A DNA stretch of 64,000 nt from contig NW_018408322.1 of the NCBI RefSeq assembly GCF_002113885.1, positions 250,878 to 314,877 on the forward strand. The letters are read 5' to 3'. Source of the stretch: Mizuhopecten yessoensis (lineage: Eukaryota). Both the position numbers and the translations under genes were made by a program. This document shows, piece by piece, positions 20,401-64,000 of this stretch. The notes below the pieces were generated by a model that had not been told where the DNA came from, ran no database searches, and worked only from the letters and a program-made list of their open reading frames with translations. Each line of letters begins with the position of its first letter. Positions within the stretch are counted from its first letter, which is position 1.

Positions 20401-21199
20401 CCCAGAAGGTGCTGGTGGTGGTGGCTCCGGCCAAGAAGGTGTTGTTGGTGGCGGCTCCGGCCAAGAAGGTGTTGTTGGTGGCGGCTCTGGCCAAGAAGGT
20501 GTTGTTAGTGGCGGCTCTGGCCAAGAAGGTGTTATTGGTGGCGGCTCTGGCAAAGAAGGTGATGCTTGTGGCGGCTCTGGCCAAGCAAGTGTTGGTAGTA
20601 TTGGCTCGGACCAAGGTGGCGTTGATGGTAGCGGCTCGGACCAAGGAGGTGATGGTGGCGGTGGCTCTGGCTTTGATGATTCATTTGCAACATATGATGA
20701 AGAAACAAAGGAAGAGCAAGGATCGATTATGTTAAATGGACAGAACCCATGTTCAGACGATTCCCATAGAAAAGGGCGGGATAATGATATTCGAGATTCA
20801 CCGAAACAAAATTTCAAGTCATCTTCTCTTGGTTCTGAATGTGACGCAAGCAAAGAAACAGGAAGTGCATCAAACGGCAAGCGTGGGAAACGTCTTCTTC
20901 CTCGGCCTTCTCACTCAGACACGTCCGTGTGTACGGGGAAACGACGACGACTCAAGAGTATTTTATCAGACGGAAAAGACAAAATGAGAAATGGTGGTAA
21001 ACGGAAGTCACAAACGAACGCGCAATCAAAGAAGTCATCAGGTGGACAAGGCTTAGGCAGAAGATTGATACAAGCCACGTGCGCCGTGGTGTCAGTCGCG
21101 GGGTTAATGGGTGCAATGGTTCAGGGCCCCTCGGGGTGTCCATGGCCCCCTGCCTTGGTGGAAGATATGTCAAGGATAATTGATCTGGACTACTTATAA
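13899..21199 (+). CDS. Uncharacterised ~1547-aa glycine-rich repeat protein; join(13899-14403, 14617-14801, 15518-15690, 17419-21199)
   Basis: Four stop-free exons with GT-AG boundaries and phases 1,0,2 join to 4644 nt (1548 codons). The ATG is in acaATGg context (an in-frame ATG also lies at 13893). The terminal exon is the 1273-aa ORF. Confidence 0.75.
14617..14801 (+). CDS. Gly-rich protein exon 2 (contains three 9-aa QRTEVDxxD-like repeats)
   Basis: tttgtag acceptor, CGA|gtaagt donor; phase matches exon 1. Confidence 0.7.
15518..15690 (+). CDS. Gly-rich protein exon 3 (LSPTASICRLSGLLQQ...MINDITYQ)
   Basis: ttacag acceptor, AT|gtaagt donor; open in the required frame. Confidence 0.68.
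17419..21199 (+). CDS. Gly-rich protein terminal exon (decapeptide array, basic region, hydrophobic tail)
   Basis: ttttcag acceptor at 17418; 3.8-kb open frame ending TAA at 21199. Confidence 0.8.
18140..20670 (+). repeat. Coding 30-bp minisatellite (ggctctggcaaagaaggtgctggtggtggc) with 180-bp higher-order repeat
   Basis: Roughly 80 decapeptide units; 60-nt lines recur identically every 180 nt from 19681 to ~20365. Confidence 0.95.
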
Positions 21200-26759: not shown

Positions 26760-28616
26760 ATGGAGGGAAATATGCTGATATTGGTCACATTCATTATATT
26801 TGTTCCGTCCGTGTTCACAAAAATGTTCATCCTTCAAGCCGATAATTCAAGAACGAGGGAAAATCATATGGTCATAAATTTGGGGAACGCTTCTAATGGA
26901 AATGCTCTCTTGATTACGGAACAGGAACCGCTGTCCATAAACTTCTGCATAAGGGAAAAGACCACTGTACGACTCAACAACTTTAGATTTTCAATTGATA
27001 ATGAAAATGCGCTATTTACGGTAAACCTGGATCACGGGTATTGGCTTGGCACCTATTACTCACCGCCTAGAGGTGGGCGGGAGGACTTTATCGACACCGG
27101 CGCGTTTCCCCGCGTGTATAACTTCGATGCCGGATGGCACGTTCTGAAAGTTGATGTTAGACCTGGGTCGGCAAATATAACAGTGGACAACATCGAATTT
27201 GAGATTACTGACGAAAGGATGAACTTAGACATTCTCCAATGCTCTATAATGTGTATACAGGAGGCAAAGTTTGTCGGGAGACATCCTTCTCAAACCGCGG
27301 CTACTGAAACTGCCTACATATCACAGCAGTCATACGACACCAAATGTGCTGAGGTGGACAACGTCAACATCCCTATCTACAATCCTGAAGTGAGTCAATT
27401 CCTCATCACGGCTACTCTTCCACAGTACAAATCATTTGCTAATCGTCGCCATGACAACCTCACAAACTGCCCACATCTGCCACCACAACTGTGGAGATTC
27501 TCTGACTTTACCGCAAGTTCTGATACTGAAAGAATACAAGGTAAAAATTCCAGCCTCATCTTTATTCCAAAAGACTTCAGTTCACGAAAATCTATCGCTA
27601 TCATTGCTTCATTTAAACTGGAAGGTGAAAAAGAAGGGAGCATTGACTCAAAAATTGGAAACGAACTATATTTGAGGTTCAGAAACTTGAGTGTCCCTGT
27701 TACAGTTATGATGCAATACCGGGAAAACACTGGACGTTTATCAGATGCTTCAGTGCGAACATTCGATCCACACTCTCTGGAACATATGTGGACTATCCCG
27801 GATTTCACGTGGATTGAAGACACCGAGAACTACATTGTGCTTTCCATGGAAGCTGATGTCAATGTCAAATTCGAGGTTAGTTATCTTCAGTTAATCAAAA
27901 GACCCATGGTCCCAGATGCAGTTTCAACTATTTATAGAAGCGACGACGTCATTATTGAGGCAGTGAATGTCCAACTTTCCTGGCTGGCACCAAAAACAAT
28001 GACGGTACGTCTAAGCAGTGGAGGCATTGCGGAAAATATCACATTCATTCGCATTTACCGACCGATTCCCTGGAACAACGGGTATGCACAGGTTTTCGTT
28101 CTTTATAATGACGGAAATGTACGACTTCTACCGACTGCTCCGGAAGGAACCGATTGGATCCCATTCGGAACCTCGGTCATTGTTGGTCAGACTAAAAGCG
28201 ACCGAGTGAGACCATACACTGTTATAACACAGGTCGATATCATTCCTGAGCGCTGGCAAATGAAGGTTTACTATGAGGACGGCAGCTCAGTCAAAATGAG
28301 CCTGAACAGCACAAGTGATGAAACCCAACTTCTTGTTAGTGATATGGATTTTATGCAAGATCGCTTCACTCACCCTTTTGCTACCATTCGCTCCATGTAC
28401 GTGGATGAGGGAAACACGGATGTGGACAGTGTGAAGATTGACAACAAACAGACGTACCATATCATGGACAAGTGGGGATCCCTTGATGGAAGATCTTTTG
28501 CCTTCCACCGCAGGTGTATATCAACTCACCTTACCCTTAGTCCGGATATTCAGGTAGACATACTCGAGACCAAGCAGGCAACGACAACACCTCAAGTGTC
28601 GCCAAACAGTATATAG
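26760..28616 (+). CDS. Uncharacterised secreted 618-aa protein, single coding exon; possible N-terminal CBM-like beta-sandwich
   Basis: 1857-nt ORF with normal globular composition; signal peptide-like MLILVTFIIFVPSVFT; several N-x-S/T sequons; aaaatcATGg start context. Confidence 0.88.
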   Translation: MEGNMLILVTFIIFVPSVFTKMFILQADNSRTRENHMVINLGNASNGNALLITEQEPLSINFCIREKTTVRLNNFRFSIDNENALFTVNLDHGYWLGTYYSPPRGGREDFIDTGAFPRVYNFDAGWHVLKVDVRPGSANITVDNIEFEITDERMNLDILQCSIMCIQEAKFVGRHPSQTAATETAYISQQSYDTKCAEVDNVNIPIYNPEVSQFLITATLPQYKSFANRRHDNLTNCPHLPPQLWRFSDFTASSDTERIQGKNSSLIFIPKDFSSRKSIAIIASFKLEGEKEGSIDSKIGNELYLRFRNLSVPVTVMMQYRENTGRLSDASVRTFDPHSLEHMWTIPDFTWIEDTENYIVLSMEADVNVKFEVSYLQLIKRPMVPDAVSTIYRSDDVIIEAVNVQLSWLAPKTMTVRLSSGGIAENITFIRIYRPIPWNNGYAQVFVLYNDGNVRLLPTAPEGTDWIPFGTSVIVGQTKSDRVRPYTVITQVDIIPERWQMKVYYEDGSSVKMSLNSTSDETQLLVSDMDFMQDRFTHPFATIRSMYVDEGNTDVDSVKIDNKQTYHIMDKWGSLDGRSFAFHRRCISTHLTLSPDIQVDILETKQATTTPQVSPNSI

Positions 28617-50885: not shown

Positions 50886-52709
50886 TTACAAATAGTCTTT
50901 ATTGGCTGTATACGGGGAGAGGGGTAGGTCGTGTTGGCAGAAAAGTACAAAATAACGGTTTAGGGAAGGTAACCCTTCCTTTATAGTCCTCAAGAAGAGG
51001 GTAAGAGCAAACAGATATGAAGTTTGTACTCCCTTTTTCATAAGTCCAAGGTCTGTCACTGGCTAGTATTTGCTTCAATGCCATGATAATTTAGCGACCT
51101 ACAAATGTCGCTTTTCTATCGGACTAATTACAAATGTCCTGTAGAGACACACAGGTGCCTTTTTGCTGCCTCCGGCTCATTATTGTTTTAAATATCAGAT
51201 TGATAATTTTTCAATTTATGCATTTCCCGTTTAATAATATAACTGTTCTATGAGCTCCTGTTGAGGTGTCTTGATAATGAGCAGTTTGGTCCGAAACAAA
51301 TTGACAACCTTCTATTGTCTACACTGTTGCATTTACTAGTATTTCCTTGTACTTATTACAATTCATTTAGAAGACTAATATATTTACAAATTATGGAGAC
51401 TTGAATTCTGAACAAACGTGTTTGAGAAACTCTTTTACTGTATATCAAAATATTGAAATGCTCTAATACTGACATTTTGGAAATCGATGAAAATAACTTT
51501 GAAAAATACTCACAAAATATCATCTTTATACAGGAACAAATGGCCATGGCTGGAGGCGTATCTGTGATTGTGAGTTAAGCAGCAGGGAAATCTGTTGTAG
51601 AAACGAGGGCCATGAACGAAGCTTAACGTACCTTCAACTGAAACCAAATAATGAATATCTGTTAGTCATTATCTGTTTTTCATCAACATAGGAAGATTAG
51701 GATCAAAAGAATGACCTAAATGGAAAAACCATCGTCATCAAACGTGGCGCCCTGTTATATTTTAGTTATGGGAGATATGGACGCTAAAGTTAGTGTGAAC
51801 ACTACTTATATTGAGGATGTGAAAGGACAATAAGGTGTTGGGTTCTGAAACAATAAGGGTGAAGGAATGATGGATTATTATGCATTACAGACTGGTTATA
51901 GGAGGCATAACAGTTCCTTATATTGAGTTAAATATATTAACATGGACCTGTCCAAATAGGAAAGTGAAAAATGGGATAAACAACATGATAAGTCGTAAAT
52001 GGGGAATATCACTGCAGGATTTAGTCTGCGAAGAGGGTCGCATTTTACCTATACTAGATATTGGAAACAGGTAAATCGTGGGCGGACAAAATTGAAGGTC
52101 GTTTGACATAAAAAATAAATAAATAAAAGGAAGTTCTGTGTAGAGAGGAGGAGCAGGTTTACAATATTAGGATGCTGTAAAAAAAGAAAATTTGACGAGT
52201 GGAAATGTTCACGTTGACACTGATATTTGTGCTATATATATGTAATAAAAAAATTTTTTATAAGTATTTGCATATGATATTTTCGCACTTATTTACTCGC
52301 TTAAAAAAAAAAAAAATTTACACACCGCATACATTTCCAGTATTTGGGAACGAGAATGGATGAACCGTGGGGAAACATCAGTAGTGCTTATTCTGGCATG
52401 AGTGTGTATTTGACAAATCTGGGACATTGTTGAGGACAGGAAATAGTGAAACAACAGCTGCAACACACAGGAACAAAACGGATCAATGCTAACGTAGTTT
52501 CAGAACTTAACGGAAGTAAAAGTAAGCGCAAGGGTTGTCCCAAAAAAACCGACGCATAAAGATGGCAGAAATAGCTTCATAAAGAGGGATCTTGAAGATT
52601 CTACATACATTCACCAGACAGCTATGTGTGGGAAAATACTTCAAGTATTAAGTATCAAGGACAAAAATGAAAAACATCAAGCTAACAAAATAGAAAGAAA
52701 GGAACGGTT

Positions 52710-52757
52710 ATCATCATCGTCGTCGCCGCCGTCGTCGTAATCATCGTCGTCGTCGTG

Positions 52758-52819
<62 letters not shown>

Positions 52820-52950
52820 TATCCTCCTTATCATCTTCATCATCTTCATCATCATCGTCTTCATCATTAATAAGTTCATTTCGATAATAAAGGGAAAAAC
52901 GATTATCATCCTCATTATTATCGTCATCGTCGTCGTCATTATCATAACCA
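52710..52950. repeat. Compound (ATC)n/(GTC)n microsatellite
   Basis: More than 20 uninterrupted ATC units at ~52757-52820, with degenerate flanks. Confidence 0.95.
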
Positions 52951-53448
52951 TCATTTCTGGTAACCTACCTGTATCTAAAGCGTAATACCAAAAGCGTGAC
53001 TATATATAATTTACCTAACTGTTGTTTTGCAAACATGCGACATTATCTGTAACTCGAATGCACGTATTTCAAACCAGGCGTTGACTTTAGAGGCTATCTT
53101 AGCTGACCTGTACATGTATATTTAAACCTTTTCTCACGCCCAATATTGTTTTCCGTGAGCAACTTGTTACCGTATCAATAACCGACTCGTCTGACAACGG
53201 CAACTTACCTCGGCACAAATGCATTTTATAACACCAATGTTGCGTGGTATGTATTTCAGCTACATATCATGTACACACGAGTAGACCGGCAGATAAATTA
53301 GAACACAATGTAACAGTTTTATATGCAGGTCTACACGAGTCAAGGTTGATCACGTTTATCTTTTACAATCCGTAACTATTTAATCTAGTTTGTCACCTCA
53401 GCCGCCTGAGAAACGTACGTCTGTTTTAGTCGTTCCAACAAATGCACA

Positions 53449-54729
53449 ATGAGCAGATCATTCCCTCGAATCAAAGCTGTCCGAGCGTACGTAACGGAAG
53501 CCAAAGAGGGAGACCAAGGAGTGGACTGTCATGACGTGAACGATAAACATTGGATCAATGGCTTCCCCACGCCAATGGCAAACCCAATGTCTGTGTATCC
53601 ACAGTACACAGTATTATGGAAGTCATGGGGAATCAACGCTCTTGGCACTATGGTTGCTGAAGTTGAGGCTGAAAACGGCGAATGCGGGGTTGGAATCACC
53701 ATCGGAGGAGAACCCGGATGTTACATTGTGGAGAAGCACCTGAGTCGGTTTGTAGAAGGTCAAGATCCGCGAAATGTGGAGTTGATGTGGGACCAAATGT
53801 TCCGTGCCACCCTCAACTATGGCCGGAAGGGATTGGCAATCCATGCCATCAGCGCCGTAGACCTGGCCATTTGGGATTTATTAGGCAAACTCCGCGGGGA
53901 ACCGGTTTATGCAATGCTAGGTGGTAAAGTGAAGGAGCGACTTCCGGTTTATTGTACAACGGCACGTCCCGACATTGCTAAGAATATGGGATTTGCCGCC
54001 TCAAAAATCACTTGTCCCTATGGTCCGGCTGATGGAGAGGAAGGGTTCAAGAAAAATGTTGAATTCTATAAAGGATGGCGCGAAAAGGTTGGTCCTGACT
54101 TTCCACTGATGCTGGACTGTTACATGGCCTTGACCCCACAATATACCGTGAGGCTAGCCAAGGCGCTCGAACCTCTCGGTCTCAAGTGGATCGAGGATTA
54201 TCTTCCTCCTGACGATTATGAAGGATACGAAGACGTACGGAAAGCCATGTTTGGATCAAAGGTCTTACTTACCACTGGAGAACACGAGTACAGTCGTTAT
54301 GGATACCAGCTTCTTTTGAAATCCCGATGTGTGGACATTTTACAGCCAGATATATCCATGTTGGGCGGGATCACTGAGGCTCGTCGATTGGTTGCCATGG
54401 CATCCGCTCACAATGTCATGGTTATACCACATGCCTCTAGTATTTATTCCTACCATCTACAATACGCCTTCTGTAATTGTCCAGTAGCAGAATTCATAGA
54501 TATGAGCCCCGAGGCTGACAGGATCGTGCCATATTTCGGAGGGCTGTTTCTTGACGAACCCCTTCCCGTCAACGGTTTTATTGACCTTCCGGATAAACCC
54601 GGGTTTGGCGTGACTTTGTGTAAGGATACACTAAGAAGGCCTTATCATAGGAGTGAGGACACAAGTCGTGAACAAGCGGAGTTAAACATAAATTTCAAAC
54701 CTTCCGAAAAAGCATTTATGCCCTTTTAG
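53449..54729 (+). CDS. rhmD: L-rhamnonate dehydratase-like (mandelate racemase subgroup, enolase superfamily), divergent paralog, intronless
   Basis: 426 aa; RhmD/LRA3 signatures GINALGT, YIVEKHL, MLDCYM (D223), KWIE (E249), TGEHE (E278), QPD (D301), IPH (H328), DKPGFGV; AATAAA at 54876. Confidence 0.9.
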   Translation: MSRSFPRIKAVRAYVTEAKEGDQGVDCHDVNDKHWINGFPTPMANPMSVYPQYTVLWKSWGINALGTMVAEVEAENGECGVGITIGGEPGCYIVEKHLSRFVEGQDPRNVELMWDQMFRATLNYGRKGLAIHAISAVDLAIWDLLGKLRGEPVYAMLGGKVKERLPVYCTTARPDIAKNMGFAASKITCPYGPADGEEGFKKNVEFYKGWREKVGPDFPLMLDCYMALTPQYTVRLAKALEPLGLKWIEDYLPPDDYEGYEDVRKAMFGSKVLLTTGEHEYSRYGYQLLLKSRCVDILQPDISMLGGITEARRLVAMASAHNVMVIPHASSIYSYHLQYAFCNCPVAEFIDMSPEADRIVPYFGGLFLDEPLPVNGFIDLPDKPGFGVTLCKDTLRRPYHRSEDTSREQAELNINFKPSEKAFMPF

Positions 54730-55351
54730 CTCCAATTTTCGTGATTTGTTAATAGCTCCAATTTTTATGATTTGGTACATTGGACATGAGAAGAGAGAAG
54801 TTGTACCTAGAAGCTTTGTGTGGACAGGGAATCATGAACGAATCCCTTTTTTCAGTGTTGAAAGGAGGGGGTGTAAATAAAGTTCTAGCCTATTGGACTT
54901 TTCCTTTTAGCACCCCTGGATTTACTTCAGGAAGTGATTATCTCAATCTTGTGCTCATTTTTCTAGGCTTTGAATCCAATTAAGGGGAATAGACATTGGA
55001 AAATATCTCATTAAAAGTGTCTCGTTAAGTGTTTGTAAAACTCTTCGCAAAAATAAAACATTACATCTGTTTGAAGATGTTTCTCATTTTTTCTGTTTTC
55101 CTGTTACAACAGGGACCTGAGATTTAAGACACATTATACATTGTGATATCTCTTCTACTCGGTGTGGAGTATTATTAGATATTTTTCGGGTCTAAAAAAT
55201 CTCCAAAATACAAACTGTGTCTTAATTGGTATGTCCTTGTACCTGTTACGTTTTCAGACGTCACAACTTCAAGTCATCGGGATGTTTGCTCAGTTACAAG
55301 ATTGCAGATATGACGTTCATCTAGTAACAGGTATTGTATGTTTAGTTATCT

Positions 55352-55545
55352 GGACCGCGATCGCCGATGGGTTAAGGCGACTGACATTCTGCTACCAGTA
55401 GCCCTCCACCACTGTGTCGCGGTTTTGATATCAACGTGGGGCGATCGCCAGGTCCTGGCCGCAGGTCGGTGATTTTTCTCCGTGTACCCCGGCTTTCCTC
55501 CACCATCAAAACTTAGCACGTCTTTAAATGACTATAGCTATTGGT
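55352..55545 (+). mobile_element. tRNA-derived V-type SINE
   Basis: Head gaccgcgatcgccgatgggttaaggcg; core ttttctccgtgtaccccggctttcctccacc; same position in the duplicated flank as the copy at 60076. Confidence 0.7.
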
Positions 55546-55811
55546 GGTGGGGATATGTAAGCTGTATCCTAGTCATTGACTGTTTTTCATCAACAAACGA
55601 AGATAAAGATCAGAATGAGCGTCTTAATGGAAATCTTGCATCAAAATTGGTGTCCTGTTAGAAATGAGAGATATGAACGCTATAGTAAGTGTGAACAATA
55701 CTGGTGTAGAAGATATGAAAGGGCAGTAAGGTGCTGGAGTATGAAACAATAACGGTGAACGCCTGATGCATTTCTGTATATGCATAACAGTCTGGTAAAA
55801 ACAGGCATAAC

Positions 55812-57400
55812 GTTATATAAATACTACATTCCTGAGTGTGTGACAGTGCCTATGATCACTCCGAGGGTATCACTGTCACCAGAGGCGACCCTAGGCACTG
55901 TCACACTCTAATGAATGTAGTGTTGTTTTTTTTATTATACCCAAAGTCAATAGTTAATAAAGTTTTTATATTTGTAACAAATATTGTATTTTCATCAACA
56001 AATATAACAGTAAACTATTCAAGATTTAACAATACAGTTAGTGCTATTAACACTGCGAAATGTCATGGCCGTTATCATAATTTAATTGTTGATATTGACG
56101 ATCGGGTTACCGAACATCTTCTTCGTATCATCATCAGTGATGGTGTCCTTGTGTTTCACTCCCCCGAAACCTTGTTTTTTCATATCAATCACAACTGCTT
56201 CGTACGTGTTCGTTTGACGCTTTGATAATTTATCCGTCAATAGTTTATGAAGTCTCACTCATTTCAGTAGTCTCGTTCAACCAGACGCTTGATCACTTGT
56301 AATTCAAGAGTAGTCTCGTTCAACCAGACGCTTGGTCACTTGTAATTCAAGAGTAGTCTCGTTCAAGCAGACGCTTGCTCACTTGTAATTCATGAGTCTG
56401 GTCAAACACAGTACTTTAAAATTACCATCACCAGAGGGCAGTGTTTTTACTTTCGTTTCCGGACGTTATGTCAACGCAATTAAATTTCAATGAATAATGA
56501 AATTAATGAAAAAAATTACCTATACATGCATTCCTGAAGTACCCGTGTATTCACTTTTATCGAGAACAATGTAAGAAAATGTGTCAAATCTCCAGAATAA
56601 TGCCATATATTTCCATTAAATAAGTCATAATGTAACTAGGTACAAAGCCAACAAGGCTGACTGAAGTGGGAAAAAAGCATGCAAAGCCAGTGAGATTTTA
56701 CCTGTACACCATTCAAATCACCTTCAAGTTCTCACTCAGGTAATCTGGCTTGACTTGTATCAATAGCCTTGTTAGCTTCATGAATTTTTGTAAAATATCC
56801 AATGAAAATACATGAAATCATTATTTTTTAAGCATTTTCTTACATTTTTCTCGTTGATAGTGAAAACATGGATACTTCAGGAATGCATATACAGGTAATT
56901 TTTTAATGAATTAAAATATTTAATGTAATTTTGGGCCACTCAAATTCTGACTTCAAAAGTTAAAAAAGGTGTGTCAATGATTTTTTTTACCAGAATCTCG
57001 GTAAGCCTCGTTATGATGTCACAAAACGAAAGCACTGCGTTTGACCAGACTCTCTATTCGGCGTAGCTTGCGCAGGCAACAGGAGTCTGGCTGAACGAGA
57101 CTATATTCGGCGTTACACCGTGGTACTAATCACCGGCGAGTAATACGCGGTAGCGACATGAAGTGCCTGTGGGCCTACATGTGCGATGAATCGCAATGCA
57201 AAAAATATTGCGGCTGAAACGAACCGTGCACGCATCTTCTTTGCGTGGTCACTATTTACACTGTCACACACACTGTCACCCGTTGCTAGAGCGTTTGGAA
57301 TCACCCTTCCATCGACTCAATGTCAAAGCGAGTGTGACAGTGTGAAATGAACAATTTGTTTCTACCAATCAGATTACATGAATTTCATTAGAGGTATGAT
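55812..57400. mobile_element. ~1.6-kb composite insertion interrupting a duplicated flank
   Basis: Homology to 51650-52000 stops at ggcataac (55811) and resumes at aattccatatattg (~57401). Confidence 0.6.
56268..57103. mobile_element. Nested palindromic MITE with TAG-starting TIRs and a triplicated 43-bp left end
   Basis: tagtctcgttcaaccagac at 56268, 56311 and 56354; inverted gtctggctgaacgagacta ending at 57103; inner inverted arms 56393-56416/57030-57053 and ~56503-56580/56834-56910. Confidence 0.75.
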
Positions 57401-57545
57401 AATTCCATATATTGAATTTCAAGCATTAACATGGACCTGCCAAAATAGAAACACAAAAAACGGAGTGAAAAATGGGATACACAGGATTCTGTATAAAGTC
57501 ACCATGCTGCTATGTGTGGGAAAATACTTCAAGCATCAAGGACAN

Positions 57546-57587
<42 letters not shown>

Positions 57588-59161
57588 GAAGGAACGTTTT
57601 ATTTTAGTTGACGTAAATAAATGTACCAGAAGTTGGGAGTGATCAATATCCAAAGGTCATTAAAATTAAAACAACATAAAAACCAAGTTGATAACAAGAT
57701 CTGGTATCTCTCAGACAGAAATGATGAAGGAGGCAGGAAGTAAATGTAGATGTGCTACACAATCATCTTCATCATCGTCGTCGTCGTCATCGTTGTCGTG
57801 ATCATCAACCAACGCTGATTAAGATCAGAAGGAGTGCCTTAATGGAACAATTTCATCAAGCATGACGCCCTGTTCCTCGTTCGTTATGGGAGATATGGAC
57901 GCTACAGTTAGTGTGAACAATACTAATGTTGAGGATGTGAAAGGGTATTAGGTAAGGGGGTCTGAAAAAATAACGGTGAACGACTGATTGATTTCTATAT
58001 ACATAACAGTCTGGTTAAAGCAGGCATAACATTTCCTTATATGGAGTTCATACATCAACATGGACCTACCCAAACAGAAAAGTGAACAAAGGGATACACC
58101 ACATCATGCTAGATCGTAAAGGTCACTGCAGAATGTAGGCTGCCAAAAGAGTCGCATTTTACCTAGTAGTTGGAAAAAGGTGAAATATGGGCGGACAAAA
58201 ACAGAATAAGATAGAAGGGCGTTTGACATTAAACAAAAAGAAATGAAAAGGAACTTCTTTGCAAGCGGACAAAAACAGAATAAGAAAGAAAGCCGTTTGA
58301 CATTAAACAAAAAGAAATGAAAAGCAACTTCTGTGCAGAGAGGAGAAACAGGTTACCAACATAAAGAGACTGTAAAGGTATACATTTTTGCGTGTTCGCA
58401 TTGCAAATCTTTAAACTGTTCATGATGTTGAATGTTTTGCGTTTACAATTTATATATATTTATCATGTATATCTATAATCTAAATAATATATTAATAAAT
58501 ATTCGCATGTTGGTATTTTCGCGCTAATTTTTTCAACGCTTAAAACGCCAATATTTTCACACTGCGAACATTTCACCTTTTATAAGCATTTAAGAAGGAG
58601 CATCGACATCGACTGTAATAAAATAGAGAAACAACAGACGGAGTGAGTTGGCTGCAGTCACATTGAGATGAAACTTATCAGAGGTGACATGATGTCAGAT
58701 CTCCCAAAGGGACACAAGTGAAAGCAAAGTGCAAGCATTGCTCCAAAGCCACACATCCAAAGAAGGCTGCAGTAGCTTCATAAAGAGGGACAACAGGATT
58801 CTACATAAAGTCACGTGACAGCTGTGTATTAGAACATATTTAAGGTTCAAGCATCAAAGACAAAAATGAAACCATCATGCAAACAAAAATAGATGGAAGG
58901 AACGTTTAAGACAGTTTAATAAAAAGAAGACCCTAATAATATGACAAAAGTTGCAAGTGATCAATATCCAGAGGACATTAACAATTGGAAAGTTTAAAGA
59001 CCAACCAAACAACATGATCTGGTAACTGCCAAACATAAATGATGCAGGAGAAAGAAGAAGAAAGTCATCATCATCACCGTCGTCGTCGTCCTCCTCGTCC
59101 TCCTCCTCGTCGTGCTCCTCCTCCCTCCTCCTCCTCCTCCTCCTCCTCCTCCTCCTCCTCG

Positions 59162-59562
59162 TCAAATATTGCTTACTACTGGAGAACACGAGTACAGTCG
59201 TTATGGATACCAGCTTCTATTGAAATCCCGATGTGTGGACATTTTACAACCAGATATATCCTGGCTGGGCGGGATCACCGAAGTTCGTCGTATGATTGCC
59301 ATGGCATCCGCTCACAATGTCATGGTCATACCACATGGTTCTAGTATCTATTCCTACCATCTACAATACGCCTTCTGTAATTGTCCAGTAACCCCTTCCC
59401 GCCAATGGTTTTATTGACCTTCCGGATAAACCAGGATTTGGCGTGACTTTGTGTAAGGATACACTAAGAAGGCCTTATCATAGGAGTGAGGACGCAAGTC
59501 GTAAACAGGTGGAGTTTAACATTAACTTTAAACCTCCTGAAAAAGCATTTATGCCATTCTAG
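59162..59562 (+). pseudogene. rhmD: 5'-truncated L-rhamnonate dehydratase pseudogene with a 71-bp internal deletion
   Basis: Matches the CDS from LLTTGEHE to the stop codon. Sequence equivalent to 62749-62819 is missing (ccagta|accccttccc), which causes a frameshift. The 5' end is fused to a (TCC)n tract. Confidence 0.92.
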
Positions 59563-60075
59563 CTCCAACTTTTACGATTTGTTACATATATAGATAGAAC
59601 TTTAACCCAAAAACTGTGTTGACAAAGAATCATGAACGGTGCCCTTTTTTAAGTGCTGAAAGTTGGTGTAAATAAAATTCTGATCTATTGGATTTTTCCT
59701 TTCAACACCCCTGGATCTGCTTCTGGAAGTGACTATCTCAATCTTGTGCTCATTTATCTAGGCTTTGAATCTTAATGAAGCGAGTAGACATTGGGAAATA
59801 TCGATCTGAAAGTTTCGTGTTAAGTGTTTGGAAAAACACACTATAAATTTTGTTATCTGTCTTACTGTGTGTGGAGTCTAATCATATTGTTTTAAAAAGT
59901 ATATGTCTAATATCTATATCTCCAAAATACACACTGTGTCTTAATTGATAGGTACACGTCCTTGTGCTTGTTAGGTTTTCTGACGTCACCAATTTAGGTT
60001 ATCGGGATGTTTGCTGAGTAACAAGATTGCAGATATGAAGGCCATCTACTATCAGATATTGTTTGCTTATTTATC

Positions 60076-60295
60076 GGGGCCGCGATGGCCGAGCGATTAA
60101 GGCGTCTGACATTCCGATAACATTAGCCCTCTGCCACTGGGTCGCGGATTCGAAGCATTCGTGGGACAGTCGCCAGGTACCGGTAGCATGTCGGTGGTTT
60201 TTCTCCGGGTACTCCGGCTTTCCTACATTACCAAAACCTGGCACGTCATTCAATACCGATAGCTGTTTATAGGACGTTAAACACAAACAAACGAA
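60076..60295 (+). mobile_element. Full-length tRNA-derived V-type SINE
   Basis: A-box tggccgagcga, B-box ggattcgaagc, core ggtttttctccgggtactccggctttcc, tail aggacgttaaacacaaacaaac. Confidence 0.8.
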
Positions 60296-60609
60296 AAGTA
60301 TAAGACAATCAACACCATAAAGTCATCAAGGACTGGACAGAAATAAGTCCTTGAACTTTAAAGTGACACCAAACTGAAGTATAACAACCTTGACACATCG
60401 GCAGGAATATCGACCCGAAGCATTATTCTGACTACGGGCTTACTAGGTTTGCCTATGCAGATAAAGAGAACGTAGAAGAGGAAAATAAATCAAAGATGAG
60501 GACATGAGTGTTCTTATGTGGCTAAAAGATCAGTTTTGGTTTCTCCAGTGTCCCCTAGGCAGAATGCACAAAAAACAAAACCTGGAGTCTGCATTGATGG
60601 AAGGGTGTG

Positions 60610-60798
60610 TATTCCGTCTTTGCGTATTGCAGAGTTATCCTCTCTTGTGAGCAGGTATTGATTGTTACGTCATAGGTTTGTGTGAGAAAATTCCGTCATT
60701 TTCTCAAAATTGATGACGTTACTCTTAAAAACCAATGACGTAACAATCAATACCTGCTCACAAGAAAAGATAACTCTGCAATACGCAAATACGGAATA
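60610..60798. mobile_element. ~190-bp MITE with ~70-bp TIRs
   Basis: tattccgtctttgcgtattgcagagttatc...gataactctgcaatacgcaaatacggaata. Confidence 0.85.
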
Positions 60799-61608
60799 GG
60801 ATGCTGTGTGTGTGGTATGTGTGTGTGTGTGTTTGGGTTGTGTAATGGTGGGCAGTTCGGTAGGCATATACACATGTACGTTGCATTATAAGGTCATGCA
60901 ACGGGATATATCGGATACATTCCTCCCAGAAGCTGCAGAGGTATACATAAAAAACCTTACTCGTTTATCGGACGATGATCAAAAGGTTCACTAACATCTA
61001 TAGTATACAACTATTTTCGTGAATTATTCAAAATATTGATTAATGGATTTCTTGCACCTGTTTGGGATCACACCGACCCTACCCCAACTATACCCCTGCC
61101 TCAAAAAAGTATAAATAATAATTAAATATAATAAAAAAATAATCAAAATCGTTGGTCGCTCGATATCGATACCTTTTATATGAAATATGACGATATATTT
61201 GCGTCCCATTAAATTTTCGCTCTTGAACTTTTGGGGTGAATACGACACGGGACTGAATCTTCAAGTTGATCTGCTGGCGGCTGAGTATGCGTGCCCATTT
61301 TTAACATTGGACAATCCTGTTTTAAAATACATCAGGGCGAATATTTAGAGGACAATGATATTGCATTGTATGTCATTGTAAATTGTATCGTAAAACCAAA
61401 CATTTCCCTTTTTCGACTTACTGGTTTATTACATTATCTACGGTACGAAATTGAACTGTTCAATTGTAAGACATGTCCGGGTGATTATGTCGTATCTAGG
61501 ACGATCTGGTTAATCTTATTCACTACACAATTATTTATATAAGAAGGTGATAAACTAGAGTACATTGTAATATATGTATACACATGCCCATATCACTTTG
61601 ATTGCAGT

Positions 61609-61645
61609 TATATAAAGCTATCTCAAGGCAGTATTGTCCAGTAAC
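61609..61645 (+). promoter_or_regulatory. TATA box and initiator-like site of the rhmD-like copy at 61711
   Basis: TATATAAA at 61609-61616 lies ~30 nt upstream of tccAgta (A at 61640), ~70 nt before the ATG. Confidence 0.5.
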
Positions 61646-61710
61646 TAGATACATCCAATCTAGTTTGCTACCTCAGTTGCTGAAGAAACACCCCTTCTAT
61701 CGCATGCGCC

Positions 61711-62991
61711 ATGAGTAGATCATTCCCTAGAATCAAAGCTGTCCGAGCGTACGTAACGGAAGCAAAAGAGGGGGACCAAGGAGCGGACTGTCATGACGTG
61801 GACGATAAGCACTGGATCAACGGCTACCCGAACCCCGTTGCCAACCCTATGTCCGTGTATCCACAGTACGCGTCATTCCGGAAGTCATGGGGAATCAACG
61901 CTCTTGGCACTATGGTTGTTGAAGTTGAGGCTGAAAACGGCGAGTGTGGGGTTGGAATCACCATCGGGGGAGAACCCGGATGTTACATTGTAGAGAAGCA
62001 CCTGAGTCGGTTTGTAGAAGGTCAAGATCCGCGAAATGTGGAACTGATGTGGGACCAAATGTTCCGTGCCACACTCAACTACGGACGGAAGGGACTTCCA
62101 ATCCAAGCCATCAGCGCCGTAGATCTAGCCATTTGGGATTTATTAGGCAAACTCCGCGGGGAACCTGTTTATGCAATGCTAGGCGGAAAAGTGAAGGAGC
62201 GACTTCCGGTTTACTGTACAACGGCACGTCCCGATATTGCTCAGAAATTGGGATTTGTCGCATCAAAAATCCCTTGTCCTTATGGTCCGACGGCCGGAGA
62301 GGAAGGGTTCAAGAAAAATGTTGAATTCTTCAAAGGATGGCGCGAGAAGGTTGGTCCTGATTTCCCACTCATGCTGGATTGTTACATGGCCTTGACCCCA
62401 CAATATACGGTAAGGCTAGCCAAGGCGCTTGAACCTCTTGGTCTGAAGTGGATCGAGGAATTTCTTCCTCCTGACGATTATGAAGGATACGAAGACGTGC
62501 GGAAAGCCATGTTTGGATCAAAGGTCTTACTTACCACTGGAGAACACGAATACAGTCGTTATGGGTACCAGCTTCTTTTGAAATCCCGATGTGTGGACAT
62601 TTTACAGCCAGATATATCCTGGCTGGGCGGGATCACCGAGGCTCGCCGTATGGTTGCCATGGCATCCGCTCACAATGTCATGGTCATACCACATGGTTCA
62701 AGTATCTATTCCTACCATCTACAATACGCCTTCTGTAATTGTCCAGTAGCAGAATTTATCAATTTGAGTCCCGAGGCTGACAAGATCGTGCCGTATTTCG
62801 GAGGGTTGTTTCCTGACGAACCCCTTCCCGCCAACGGTTTTATTGACCTTCCGGATAAACCCGGATTTGGCGTGACTTTGTGTAAGGATATACTAAGAAG
62901 GCCTTACCAGAGGAGTGAAGACGCAAGTCGTAAACAGGCGGAATTAAACATTAACTTTAAACCTCCTGAAAAAGCGTGCATGCCATTCTAG
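61711..62991 (+). CDS. rhmD: L-rhamnonate dehydratase-like, canonical paralog, intronless
   Basis: 426 aa; retains H34, R57, D223, E249, E278, D301, H328 and E348, equivalent to the substrate, Mg2+ and acid-base residues of E. coli RhmD (YfaW); also close to fungal LRA3/LGD1. Confidence 0.93.
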   Translation: MSRSFPRIKAVRAYVTEAKEGDQGADCHDVDDKHWINGYPNPVANPMSVYPQYASFRKSWGINALGTMVVEVEAENGECGVGITIGGEPGCYIVEKHLSRFVEGQDPRNVELMWDQMFRATLNYGRKGLPIQAISAVDLAIWDLLGKLRGEPVYAMLGGKVKERLPVYCTTARPDIAQKLGFVASKIPCPYGPTAGEEGFKKNVEFFKGWREKVGPDFPLMLDCYMALTPQYTVRLAKALEPLGLKWIEEFLPPDDYEGYEDVRKAMFGSKVLLTTGEHEYSRYGYQLLLKSRCVDILQPDISWLGGITEARRMVAMASAHNVMVIPHGSSIYSYHLQYAFCNCPVAEFINLSPEADKIVPYFGGLFPDEPLPANGFIDLPDKPGFGVTLCKDILRRPYQRSEDASRKQAELNINFKPPEKACMPF

Positions 62992-64000
62992 CTCCAATTT
63001 TCGTGATTTCTTACGTATTTGGAGAGGAGTATTTCCCAGAACAATCGTGTGGACAGGACACCAAGAAAAGTGTTCTGCCAGAAGTGTGTTTCATTATCAA
63101 AATTAACATTTTGCCAGGTTTACCACATTTGTGAAAACGTCTTTTCCTTGATAACAACATATTTGATGGCAGTAACTAGAAATACTAAATTCAAATCAGG
63201 TATCACTTTATAAGAAAATAATGTAGGACATCTTACAAGCAATTGGCAACCCTTTTACAAAATACTGTTTAAAGTGTACCACAATTAAAGCATACCAGAT
63301 TGAAAATGAGTTCTTCGGTTGTTTAATATTAGCGCAACACATATTTGTTGGATCTTACATTCGCGTTTTCATTTCGTTGATTCATAGGGTCTGCCTCTAT
63401 GGTTTCACATCTTTGATTAACCTGATTCAGTTGTTCCATCTGTTCCATGCCCGTGCTACAAACGTTCGTAGATACTTGTTGTCACTATTCCATTGCAATG
63501 ATACACATTTTCACGGACAGACGATGTAAAATTAATTTATTCATCTAGCTCTACTTGTATTATCTATACAAATACGAATATTTATATCACAGCGGAAGAT
63601 TTCTTCTCAGAGGAAATCATAGGATTACCGTGAGGTAACCGAAACTGTAAAAACATCCTCTACGATAAATTTTGGTATCTTCAAATTTCTCTTCTTCTTA
63701 GTCACATTTACAATGGATGCAGTGAACCGAACCACTCTAATATGACAACTTGCAGTTTGATTTTACTTTTTTTGGAAGGATGAATTGAGCAGCAGTCATT
63801 TAAATGAAATGTTTGGGTATCAATTATACTTGCACAAAATGCTAGATTTTGGTTGTTTTGTTTTATATAATATTTGACTTCATGAAAAAATGTCAACATA
63901 GACAGTAAACTGCTTCAAGTTGGCATTCAGAGTCAATATGAATGCCAATTGGAAATACCAAATTCAACATGAAACGTTAGCGCAATGCAAATATGCAGTT

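What the first reader, a model, noticed from the sequence alone, without database searches (positions are those of the whole stretch)
53449..62991. Intronless, microbial-type L-rhamnonate dehydratase genes tandemly expanded in an animal genome
Seen: two intact 426-aa ORFs and one pseudogene, all intronless, embedded among animal SINEs/MITEs in the same window as a spliced KIF4; the 61711 copy has a TATA/Inr-like promoter and the 53449 copy an AATAAA. Established: RhmD/LRA3 catalyses L-rhamnonate to 2-keto-3-deoxy-L-rhamnonate in the non-phosphorylative L-rhamnose pathway of bacteria and fungi; the related fungal LGD1 acts in D-galacturonate catabolism. The familiar vertebrate sugar-acid dehydratase of this superfamily is ENOSF1 (L-fuconate dehydratase), a different subfamily. 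Inference: a horizontally acquired or patchily retained enzyme may let this (probably filter-feeding) animal catabolise algal or bacterial rhamnose or uronic acids, and it is being amplified locally.
Basis: partly seen in the sequence, partly recalled or inferred. Interest (0 to 1): 0.8.

Follow-up and report, generated by a model that had tools for sequence, protein, structure and literature searches.

The report
Ancient animal rhamnonate-dehydratase gene, locally duplicated
The scallop's two intact copies and one broken copy of a "bacterial-looking" sugar-acid dehydratase gene are real, but they were inherited from the common ancestor of animals and choanoflagellates, lost their introns long ago, and were not recently transferred from microbes.

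Summary
Two intact 426-aa single-exon ORFs (53449-54729 and 61711-62991, 92% identical) and a 5'-truncated, frameshifted fragment (59163-59562) all belong to the L-rhamnonate dehydratase (RhmD) family. They lie about 300 kb inside a 2.18-Mb host scaffold.

The horizontal-transfer reading is not supported.
- Orthologues occur in many molluscs, a brachiopod, annelids, a flatworm, three sponge classes, choanoflagellates and marine protists.
- These form one eukaryote clade (99/98 support) that excludes all bacteria.
- AU tests accept Spiralia (p 0.31) and Metazoa (p 0.16) as clades and reject spiralians grouped with the nearest bacteria (p 0.025).
- Sponge and choanoflagellate genes have 11-13 introns, some at shared positions. 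A flatworm keeps three and an annelid one, at shared positions.
- So the single-exon state is old, stepwise intron loss.

Copy 2 is the positional orthologue of the Pecten and Argopecten gene (same Melibiase_2 neighbour) and is strongly constrained. Copy 1 is a lineage-specific duplicate with 28 derived substitutions against 4, four of them at sites invariant in 175 sequences. It appears to be the transcribed copy, while copy 2 was nearly silent in three RNA-seq runs.

No rhamnosidase or mutarotase partner was found. The genes are already auto-annotated but unstudied. Interest is moderate to low.

The parts
61711..62991 (+). Copy 2 (c2): intact single-exon RhmD-family gene, 426 aa. It is the positional orthologue of the Pecten/Argopecten gene and is highly constrained.
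   Evidence: ORF. NF011968 515.3 bits vs cut-off 393. 95% aa identity to Pecten maximus. Melibiase_2 exons lie about 7 kb downstream, as in Pecten and Argopecten. dN/dS 0.027 vs Pecten and only 4 derived aa changes. Essentially no RNA reads in three RNA-seq runs.
53449..54729 (+). Copy 1 (c1): intact single-exon paralogue, 426 aa. It is fast-evolving, keeps the catalytic residues, and has second-shell and capping-loop residues changed. It is probably the transcribed copy.
   Evidence: ORF. NF011968 500.6 bits. Sister of c2 at 100/91. 28 derived aa changes including R57W, E250D, W304M and G329A at sites invariant in 175 sequences. 69-97% of its words are held in 14 transcriptome-sized runs from 5 studies, and run X1 holds c1 but not c2 or intergenic DNA.
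59163..59562 (+). Pseudogene fragment (psi): 3' third of the gene only, with a 71-nt internal deletion and frameshift.
   Evidence: tblastn finds aa 271-347 (frame 3) and 371-427 (frame 1). Gap at c2 nt 1038-1108. Zero RNA depth.
51680..55542 (+). Duplication unit holding c1 with its flanks. It is homologous at about 70-78% to the psi unit.
   Evidence: blastn blocks 51680-52140, 52514-52710 and 54753-55542 match 57802-58261, 58716-58908 and 59560-60267.
57802..60267 (+). Duplication unit holding psi with its flanks. About 1.3 kb, including the promoter-proximal region and the first ~270 codons, is deleted relative to the c1 unit.
60610..60800 (.). MITE-like ~190-bp palindromic dispersed repeat about 0.9 kb upstream of c2. 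It is host-genome repeat context and the source of the only RNA-read pile-up.
   Evidence: At least 1,526 candidate copies. 40 scored at 92-95% identity, matching in both orientations. Reads here run on into unlike sequence in 93-98% of cases.
61609..61617 (+). TATA-like motif (TATATAAAG) upstream of c2. Motif only.
   Evidence: Sequence. No transcript support.
54876..54881 (+). First AATAAA/ATTAAA hexamer after the c1 stop (+147). Motif only.

Best explanation
These are host genes of a pectinid scallop that belong to a eukaryote-wide clade of the L-rhamnonate dehydratase (RhmD) family. The species is probably Mizuhopecten yessoensis, judged from assembly size and from memory, and is unverified.

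Origin. The gene was present, with many introns, in the common ancestor of choanoflagellates and animals. It was kept in sponges and spiralians and lost in other animal lineages. Within Spiralia the introns were lost stepwise: a flatworm keeps three and Capitella one, while Owenia, Lingula, Lottia and the scallops have none.

Local history. In this scallop's lineage a DNA-level tandem duplication (dS about 0.33) produced three products.
- c2 is the positional orthologue and is under very strong purifying selection.
- c1 kept the five catalytic residues but accumulated 7-fold more amino-acid changes, several next to catalytic residues and in the capping-domain loops. It appears to be the copy that is transcribed in most public transcriptomes.
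- psi is a 5'-truncated, frameshifted dead copy.

Mechanism (inferred). The protein is a Mg2+-dependent enolase-superfamily dehydratase. A His-Asp dyad (H328/D301) abstracts the alpha-proton of a sugar acid bound to Mg2+ (D223/E249/E278). It then eliminates the beta-hydroxyl to give a 2-keto-3-deoxy acid. L-rhamnonate is the most likely substrate for c2-type proteins. The physiological pathway in animals is not established.

Shown: sequences, family scores, tree, intron positions, synteny, rate asymmetry. Inferred: substrate, dietary role, c1 expression (indirect), c1 functional shift.
For: Family:
- NF011968 gives 500-515 bits against a cut-off of 393.
- The best solved relatives are RhmD enzymes: 2oz3 at 468 bits, Gibberella 3fxg at 430, E. 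coli and Salmonella at 387.
- D223, E249, E278, D301 and H328 are invariant in 114 eukaryote and 61 bacterial sequences and in both copies.

Host location:
- The scaffold is 2.18 Mb.
- A kinesin exon lies in the window, and a MITE with at least 1,526 copies lies next to c2.
- Microsynteny with Pecten and Argopecten chromosomes holds: RhmD-like followed by Melibiase_2.

Vertical descent:
- Identity falls with species distance: pectinids 94-95%, other bivalves 77-80%, gastropods 72-78%, Lingula 76%, annelids 71-72%, sponges and choanoflagellates 69-70%, nearest bacteria 59-66%.
- The eukaryote clade has 99/98 support, with bivalves and gastropods each monophyletic.
- AU tests give Spiralia p 0.312, Metazoa p 0.155, and Spiralia plus nearest bacteria p 0.025.

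Introns:
- Counts are Amphimedon 13, Corticium 11, S. rosetta 11, Macrostomum 3 and Capitella 1.
- Nine positions are shared between the two sponges.
- 236/0 and 283/2 are shared between sponge and choanoflagellate.
- 339/0 is shared between flatworm and choanoflagellate.
- 90/1 is shared between flatworm and annelid.

Duplication:
- c1 and c2 are sisters at 100/91.
- Pecten and Argopecten have one copy within +-10 kb.
- c1 and psi share flank homology.
- dS is 0.33. Derived changes are 28 against 4, which gives chi-square 18 by my arithmetic.

Expression.
Against: - The deep backbone of the eukaryote clade is unresolved (bootstraps 29-54). The ML tree itself does not recover Metazoa or Spiralia as clades. 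The AU tests only fail to reject them.
- Vertical descent requires several independent losses: cnidarians, deuterostomes, ecdysozoans and others.
- The fully intronless state must have arisen more than once (molluscs, Lingula, Owenia), given the retained Capitella intron.
- One or two shared intron positions could be coincidence. Rough chance is about 3% for the flatworm-choanoflagellate match and about 0.2% for the flatworm-annelid match, ignoring splice-site preferences.
- c1 expression rests on k-mer shares in runs whose RNA label is a guess.
- c2 is strongly conserved yet almost unread in three RNA-seq runs of unknown tissue. This is unexplained.
- No rhamnose-pathway partner was found in the genome.
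Confidence: 0.8

Rival explanations
1. Recent horizontal transfer of a bacterial (or fungal) RhmD gene into scallops or molluscs, followed by local amplification.
For: The genes have no introns and score as a bacterial equivalog family. The family is mostly bacterial. Model animals lack it.
Against: - All eukaryote sequences form one clade that excludes bacteria (99/98).
- Holding spiralians with the nearest bacteria costs 42.5 lnL, p-AU 0.025.
- The nearest bacteria are 59-66% identical, against 69-70% for sponges and choanoflagellates.
- Orthologues occur in five animal phyla.
- Intron positions are shared among flatworm, annelid, sponges and a choanoflagellate.
- Synteny is conserved among three scallop genera.
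- dS to Pecten is saturated at about 1.0-1.3.
Confidence: 0.02
2. Ancient eukaryote-to-eukaryote transfer. A protist (prey or symbiont) copy entered the spiralian stem lineage, and perhaps sponges separately. This would explain the patchy animal distribution without many losses.
For: - The backbone of the eukaryote clade is unresolved. The ML tree interleaves spiralians, choanoflagellates, stramenopiles, Picozoa and dinoflagellates.
- The family is absent from named cnidarians, deuterostomes and ecdysozoans.
- Holders are mostly aquatic bacterivores or filter feeders.
Against: - Metazoa and Spiralia monophyly are not rejected.
- From Sycon, the best non-sponge hits are Lingula and Haliotis at 77%, at or above S. 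rosetta at 76% and protists at 71-76%.
- Macrostomum shares an intron position with S. rosetta.
- Loss of metabolic genes in several animal lineages is common (general knowledge).
Confidence: 0.1
3. The local copies, or the whole spiralian gene, are retrocopies of a spliced parent gene.
For: The coding region is a single exon. High-identity homology between c1 and c2 is limited to the ORF, from -7 to +22 bp.
Against: - No intron-bearing parent exists in the genome. Only these three places match.
- c1 and psi share about 460 bp upstream and about 800 bp downstream homology at the divergence expected for dS 0.33.
- c1 and c2 share a roughly 45-nt conserved block upstream of the ATG.
- Capitella and Macrostomum retain introns at a shared position. 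A single retroposition at the base of Spiralia is therefore excluded.
- Pecten, Argopecten, Lottia, Lingula and Owenia are already single-exon.
Confidence: 0.05
4. Assembly contamination by microbial or prey DNA.
For: None beyond the bacterial-looking family name.
Against: - The genes lie about 300 kb inside a 2.18-Mb scaffold.
- Host kinesin and Melibiase_2 genes and a host MITE flank them.
- The locus is syntenic in chromosome-level Pecten and Argopecten assemblies.
- c1 is held in runs of six independent studies.
Confidence: 0.01

Closest known systems
Bacterial L-rhamnonate dehydratase RhmD/YfaW (E. coli, Salmonella; Azotobacter orthologue 2oz3), enolase superfamily, mandelate-racemase subgroup
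   Same: - Same two-domain architecture.
- Scores above the curated equivalog cut-off.
- 387-468 bits to the solved enzymes over the full length.
- The three metal ligands and the His-Asp dyad are invariant.
- The nearest bacterial relatives sit next to a GH78 rhamnosidase, a sugar ABC transporter and SDR dehydrogenases.
   Different: - The scallop genes belong to a separate eukaryote-only clade.
- That clade has a roughly 25-aa C-terminal extension ending in a conserved PF.
- There is no operon context, and no rhamnosidase or mutarotase was detected in the genome.
- The activity is untested.
[quoted passage not shown]
   Same: Same family and presumably the same chemistry. Gibberella RhmD aligns over residues 3-390 at 430 bits.
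   Different: - The fungal enzyme scores lower than the Azotobacter one (430 vs 468 bits). It is therefore not the closest relative, and animal genes are not simply 'fungal-type'.
- I could not place fungal LRA3 or LGD1 in the tree, because no referenced fungal sequence was available.
- Fungal genes lie in LRA1-4 clusters (PMC5674754 abstract). No such cluster was seen here.
ENOSF1 (animal L-fuconate dehydratase)
   Same: An enolase-superfamily acid-sugar dehydratase encoded in animal genomes. It acts on a 6-deoxy-L-hexonate (established knowledge).
   Different: It belongs to a different subfamily. The protein search of the genome found only the three RhmD-like places. ENOSF1 is widespread in vertebrates, whereas the RhmD-like gene is absent from named deuterostomes.
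Auto-annotated 'L-rhamnonate dehydratase-like' genes of molluscs, sponges, Lingula and S. rosetta in NCBI/UniProt
   Same: These are the direct orthologues, at 69-95% identity. Both window proteins are themselves already in NCBI/UniRef.
   Different: None has been studied. None of the 40 titles and abstracts listed, out of 51 full-text papers that mention the enzyme, concerns an animal. The tandem duplicate c1, with changed invariant residues, is specific to this scallop lineage.

Membership tests
L-rhamnonate dehydratase (RhmD; NCBIfam NF011968 equivalog) | Full-length score above the curated equivalog cut-off (393 bits) | tested here: met
   500.6 bits (c1) and 515.3 bits (c2), aligned over 3-394 of 395 profile positions.
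L-rhamnonate dehydratase (RhmD; NCBIfam NF011968 equivalog) | Enolase-superfamily architecture: N-terminal capping domain plus C-terminal barrel domain | tested here: met
   PF02746 MR_MLE_N and PF13378 MR_MLE_C are present in both copies.
L-rhamnonate dehydratase (RhmD; NCBIfam NF011968 equivalog) | Three carboxylate Mg2+ ligands at the ends of barrel strands 3-5, and the His-Asp catalytic dyad at strands 7 and 6. Residue roles are from my memory of Rakus et al. 2008, which is not held here. | tested here: met
   D223, E249, E278, D301 and H328 are 100% conserved in 114 eukaryote and 61 bacterial family members and in both c1 and c2. They are invariant in alignment A1. The assignment of roles to these residues was not verified with a structure here.
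L-rhamnonate dehydratase (RhmD; NCBIfam NF011968 equivalog) | Catalyses dehydration of L-rhamnonate to 2-keto-3-deoxy-L-rhamnonate | not testable with these tools
   This needs an enzyme assay. c1 has changes at family-invariant sites (R57W, E250D, W304M, G329A), so its activity is especially uncertain.
Non-phosphorylative L-rhamnose pathway (LRA1-LRA4 or LRA5/6) as a system | Co-occurrence with the other pathway enzymes or with rhamnose-releasing enzymes | tested here: not met
   No GH78 rhamnosidase (PF17389) and no rhamnose mutarotase (PF05336) is detectable in the genome. Only one Amidohydro_2 exon was found. SDR, FAH and HpcH partners were not searched, because those families are too generic. 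The search is exon-by-exon on a draft assembly, so absence is not proven. In the nearest bacteria the context is present.
Horizontally transferred gene in an animal | Nested within a donor (non-animal) clade, apart from other eukaryote or animal sequences | tested here: not met
   The eukaryote clade has 99/98 support. Spiralia plus nearest bacteria is rejected at p-AU 0.025.
Horizontally transferred gene in an animal | Absent from related animal lineages and outgroups | tested here: not met
   Orthologues are present in Mollusca, Brachiopoda, Annelida, Platyhelminthes, Porifera and choanoflagellates.
Horizontally transferred gene in an animal | Lack of introns as a mark of prokaryotic origin | tested here: not met
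   The single-exon state is derived. Ancestral introns are present in sponges, S. rosetta, Macrostomum and Capitella at shared positions.
Processed retrocopy | An intron-bearing parent elsewhere; homology limited to the mRNA; poly(A) remnant | tested here: not met
   There is no other copy in the genome. Flank homology between c1 and psi extends 0.5-0.8 kb. Poly(A) tracts and target-site duplications were not specifically searched.

The most novel reading that the evidence does not exclude
Copy 1 is a transcribed, neofunctionalised dehydratase. Its active site was remodelled by R57W, E250D/F251Y next to a metal ligand, W304M, G329A next to the catalytic His, and N351D/L352M, giving it a different acid-sugar specificity. 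More broadly, sponges, molluscs, brachiopods, annelids and choanoflagellates would keep an endogenous non-phosphorylative route for 6-deoxy- or L-sugar acids from algal and bacterial polysaccharides. Cnidarians, ecdysozoans and deuterostomes would have lost that capacity, so it has gone unnoticed in model animals.
Probability: 0.25. Interest if true: 0.55.

Novelty: new member of a known kind. Interest (0 to 1): 0.33.

Why it matters
This removes a false horizontal-transfer candidate. It also shows by a worked case that "intronless plus bacterial family name" is not evidence of transfer.

What remains of interest is modest but real. A conserved, unstudied RhmD-family enzyme is present in aquatic filter-feeding and bacterivorous animals and in their protist relatives. 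It is missing from every standard model animal.

If c2-type proteins do dehydrate L-rhamnonate, these animals can process a sugar that is abundant in algal and bacterial cell walls without microbial help. This bears on bivalve nutrition and aquaculture, and on how animal metabolic repertoires were pruned.

The c1/c2 pair is a clean natural experiment in asymmetric evolution after duplication. One copy is frozen. The other changes residues that are invariant from bacteria to animals, and expression seems to have shifted to the diverged copy.

Tried and rejected
- **Exhaustive representative search.** The 50% clustering collapsed the whole RhmD clade. The output was mostly fragments and 30-46% relatives without names. 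I used it only for outgroups.
- **Naming of distant representatives.** No fungal names came back, so fungal LRA3/LGD1 could not be put in the tree.
- **Rakus et al. 2008.** The paper is not held. Catalytic-residue roles therefore rest on invariance plus memory.
- **Protein atlas.** It returned only generic MR/MLE clusters.
- **Literature.** I found nothing on animal RhmD genes. The family is not in the held supplements of the S. rosetta HGT paper. The metazoan HGT compendium has no supplement held.
- **Partner search.** It was negative or uninformative.
- **Exact-sequence look-up of c1 and c2.** It shows both are annotated in NCBI but gives no transcript evidence.
- **Single retroposition at the base of Spiralia.** I considered this after and rejected it, because of the introns retained in Macrostomum and Capitella.
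- **Local retrocopies.** Rejected because of flank homology.
- **Polarising synonymous changes with Pecten.** dS is 1.0-1.3 and saturated, so per-branch dS is unreliable. I assumed equal dS on both branches instead.
- **Order of origin of psi relative to c1 and c2.** Unresolved. Unique changes in the shared region are 22, 12 and 14.
- **Spliced models.** Intron mapping only threaded database proteins onto their own loci.

Full report
**1. Observation**

The window holds two uninterrupted 426-aa ORFs on the + strand, at 53449-54729 (c1) and 61711-62991 (c2).
- They are 390/426 identical without gaps.
- Both carry MR_MLE_N and MR_MLE_C.
- Both pass the curated NCBIfam equivalog for L-rhamnonate dehydratase, NF011968, at 500.6 and 515.3 bits against a cut-off of 393.

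A third copy, psi, lies at 59163-59562.
- It covers only residues 271-347 and 371-427, in two frames.
- It has a 71-nt internal deletion and lacks the first ~270 codons.

These are the only three matches in the 987.6-Mb assembly. The AATAAA after c1 (+147) and the TATA-like motif about 95-100 nt before c2 exist, but only as motifs.

**2. The genes are in the animal genome**

- The window is positions 250878-314877 of a 2,180,268-bp scaffold.
- It contains a kinesin motor-domain exon at 3950-4363 (-).
- About 0.9 kb upstream of c2 lies a ~190-bp palindromic dispersed element with at least 1,526 candidate copies in the genome.
- In chromosome-level assemblies of Pecten maximus and Argopecten irradians, the orthologue is followed by a Melibiase_2 gene.
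- Exons of that same gene align 7-9 kb downstream of c2 in the extension of the window, at extension coordinates 69715-71940.
- c1 words are held in runs of six studies.

Contamination is excluded for practical purposes. The two single N's in the window were left untouched.

**3. Distribution**

A word-index search from c2 returns the following:

| Group | Identity to c2 |
|---|---|
| Pectinids | 94-95% |
| Other bivalves | 77-80% |
| Gastropods | 72-78% |
| A chiton | 74% |
| Lingula | 76% |
| Annelids | 71-72% |
| Macrostomum | 67% |
| Sponges | 69-71% |
| Choanoflagellates | about 67-71% (S. rosetta 70%) |

- Unnamed clusters turned out to be oysters, Picozoa, the dinoflagellate Breviolum and the stramenopile Incisomonas.
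- A second search from the calcareous sponge Sycon recovers essentially the same ~120 clusters.
- Its best non-sponge hits are Lingula and Haliotis at 77% and S. rosetta at 76%.
- No cnidarian, ctenophore, placozoan, deuterostome or ecdysozoan name appears.
- The nearest prokaryotes among 185,579 species genomes are Gemmatimonadota, Acidobacteriota and Chloroflexota MAGs at 59-66%.

**4. Phylogeny**

- FastTree on 188 rows puts all eukaryote sequences in one clade, apart from bacteria.
- A careful IQ-TREE analysis of 67 rows (LG+C20+F+G4 by PMSF) agrees, with support 99/98 and a stem of 0.32.
- The sister group is Chloroflexota + Gemmatimonadota + Acidobacteriota (93/85).
- Pectinids (100/99), bivalves and gastropods are each monophyletic.
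- c1 and c2 are sisters (100/91).
- The deeper eukaryote backbone is unresolved (bootstraps 29-54), and the ML tree does not itself recover Spiralia or Metazoa.

AU tests:

| Constraint | Result |
|---|---|
| Spiralia as one clade | p 0.312, accepted |
| Metazoa as one clade | p 0.155, accepted |
| Spiralians + eight nearest bacteria | delta lnL 42.5, p 0.025, rejected |

The groups follow taxonomy, but I chose them after seeing the first tree.

**5. Gene structure**

The coding region is a single exon in:
- Pecten and Argopecten
- Lottia
- Lingula
- Owenia

Exact threading of database proteins onto their own loci gives these intron counts:

| Species | Introns |
|---|---|
| Amphimedon | 13 |
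| Corticium | 11 |
| Salpingoeca rosetta | 11 |
| Macrostomum | 3 |
| Capitella | 1 (56 bp) |

On a common alignment, in c2 codon/phase numbering:
- Nine positions are shared by the two sponge classes.
- 236/0 is shared by both sponges and S. rosetta.
- 283/2 is shared by Amphimedon and S. rosetta.
- 339/0 is shared by Macrostomum and S. rosetta.
- 90/1 is shared by Macrostomum and Capitella.

Rough chance expectations, by my arithmetic and ignoring splice-site preferences, are about 3% for the flatworm-choanoflagellate match and about 0.2% for the flatworm-annelid match.

The multi-exon gene is therefore ancestral, and spiralian genes descend from it. The single-exon state of molluscs is the end of stepwise intron loss. 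It is neither a prokaryotic signature nor a single retroposition at the base of Spiralia.

**6. The local duplication**

- Only one copy lies within +-10 kb in Pecten and Argopecten. With c1 and c2 as sisters, the duplication is specific to this scallop's lineage.
- It is not recent. NG86 gives dS 0.33 and dN 0.041 between the copies.
- High-identity homology between c1 and c2 is confined to the ORF, from -7 to +22 bp. A conserved ~45-nt block persists upstream of both ATGs.
- The flanks of c1 and psi align over about 460 bp upstream and about 800 bp downstream at 70-78%. That is the divergence expected for neutral DNA of this age.
- This fits segmental DNA duplication, not retroposition.

**7. 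Asymmetric evolution**

- Against Pecten, dN/dS is 0.027 for c2 and 0.064 for c1.
- Polarised with Pecten, c1 has 28 derived amino-acid changes and c2 has 4. A relative-rate chi-square on those counts is 18 by my arithmetic.
- Assuming equal dS on both branches, omega is about 0.22 for c1 and about 0.03 for c2. c1 is still under selection, but much relaxed or partly redirected.
- The five presumed catalytic residues (D223, E249, E278, D301, H328) are intact in both copies and invariant in 175 family members.
- c1 changes R57W, E250D, W304M and G329A at positions that are 100% conserved in eukaryotes, or 99% for R57, and 97-100% conserved in bacteria. It also changes Q132H and N351D.
- c1 deviates at 7 of 158 sites that are at least 95% conserved. 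The median is 1, and c2 deviates at 1.
- Several changes sit next to catalytic residues or in the N-terminal capping loops. In this superfamily those loops set substrate specificity (established knowledge; positions not checked on a structure here).

**8. Expression**

- c1 words are held at 0.69-0.97 in 14 runs of 45-104 Mb of contigs from five studies. Their RNA label is a guess.
- I laid 58500-64000 (psi + c2; 5,501 letters) with three genuine RNA-seq raw-read runs from three studies and with run X1.
  - psi has zero depth.
  - c2 has zero depth in X23, X24 and X1.
  - c2 has depth 0.3-2.1 over 61628-62179 in X20. Those reads could be c1 reads in locally similar stretches.
  - The only pile-up is the MITE, where 93-98% of reads run on into unlike sequence.
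- X1 holds 97% of c1 words but nothing of c2 or unique intergenic DNA. It therefore behaves as a transcriptome in which c1, not c2, is expressed.
Why the strongly conserved c2 is nearly unread remains unexplained.

**9. Function**

- The nearest solved proteins are RhmD enzymes: Azotobacter 2oz3 at 468 bits, Gibberella 3fxg at 430, and E. coli/Salmonella at 387.
- The nearest bacterial homologues lie beside a GH78 alpha-L-rhamnosidase and two SDRs (Gemmatimonadota), or beside a sugar ABC transporter and SDRs (Acidobacteriota). This ties that branch of the family to rhamnose.
- The most likely chemistry is Mg2+-dependent dehydration of L-rhamnonate, or a close 6-deoxy/L-sugar acid, to the 2-keto-3-deoxy acid.
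- In the scallop genome I found no GH78 and no rhamnose mutarotase, and only one Amidohydro_2 exon. A complete pathway is not shown, and the dietary role is inference.
- Fungal LRA3 scores below a bacterial enzyme. It could not be placed in the tree.

**10. What is known**

- Both proteins are already in NCBI/UniRef. Orthologues are auto-annotated as "L-rhamnonate dehydratase-like".
- Of the 51 full-text papers that name the enzyme, none of the 40 listed concerns an animal by its title or abstract.
- Searches combining the family with HGT, invertebrates or bivalve digestion found nothing.
- The family is absent from the held supplements of the S. rosetta HGT study.

**Verdict**

The feature is real. 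This is a new, unstudied animal branch of a known enzyme family, with an old lineage-specific duplication showing marked asymmetry. Interest is moderate to low.

Noticed in passing
window 17378-21199 (+): A 1,273-aa ATG ORF with no Pfam match. Its core (18137-20671) is about 85 tandem copies of a 30-bp unit encoding a glycine-rich decapeptide. This is the cause of the local GC of 0.59 and GC skew of 0.45. It may be a structural, matrix or silk-like protein, or a coding-looking minisatellite.
   Followed up: partly
window 26760-28616 (+): A 618-aa single-exon ORF with no Pfam family at E<=0.01.
   Followed up: no
window about 60610-60800: A ~190-bp palindromic MITE-like element with at least 1,526 candidate copies genome-wide at 92-95% identity. 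It is abundantly represented in RNA-seq as part of many different transcripts.
   Followed up: partly
I did not check whether it is KIF4 specifically.
   Followed up: partly
L009 (Capitella) and L097 (Macrostomum): The only intron of the Capitella gene (56 bp) and the second intron of the Macrostomum gene (81 bp) lie at the identical codon and phase, c2 codon 90 phase 1. Sponges and S. rosetta have no intron there. This looks like a spiralian-specific intron that molluscs, Lingula and Owenia have since lost.
   Followed up: yes
L013 82-2046, 4122-4931, 4948-5709; L015 and L021 flanks: The nearest bacterial RhmD homologues (Gemmatimonadota, Acidobacteriota MAGs) sit in apparent rhamnose operons. 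These contain a GH78 alpha-L-rhamnosidase, a fused permease/binding-protein ABC transporter and two SDR dehydrogenases.
   Followed up: partly
G000:C5590:639035-639214 (-) (L094): The single Amidohydro_2 (PF04909) exon found in the genome. It could be ACMSD or a sugar-lactonase-type partner. It was not resolved.
   Followed up: no
alignment A1, C-terminus (c2 residues about 402-426): The eukaryote-clade proteins, and a few of the nearest bacterial ones, share a roughly 25-aa C-terminal extension ending in a conserved Pro-Phe. The E. coli-type profile ends before it. Its function is unknown.
   Followed up: no
L096 (Logan contig of an Argopecten run): A 1,461-nt contig carries the complete Argopecten ORF with short flanks. 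It looks like a transcript and suggests the single-copy orthologue is expressed in that species.
   Followed up: no
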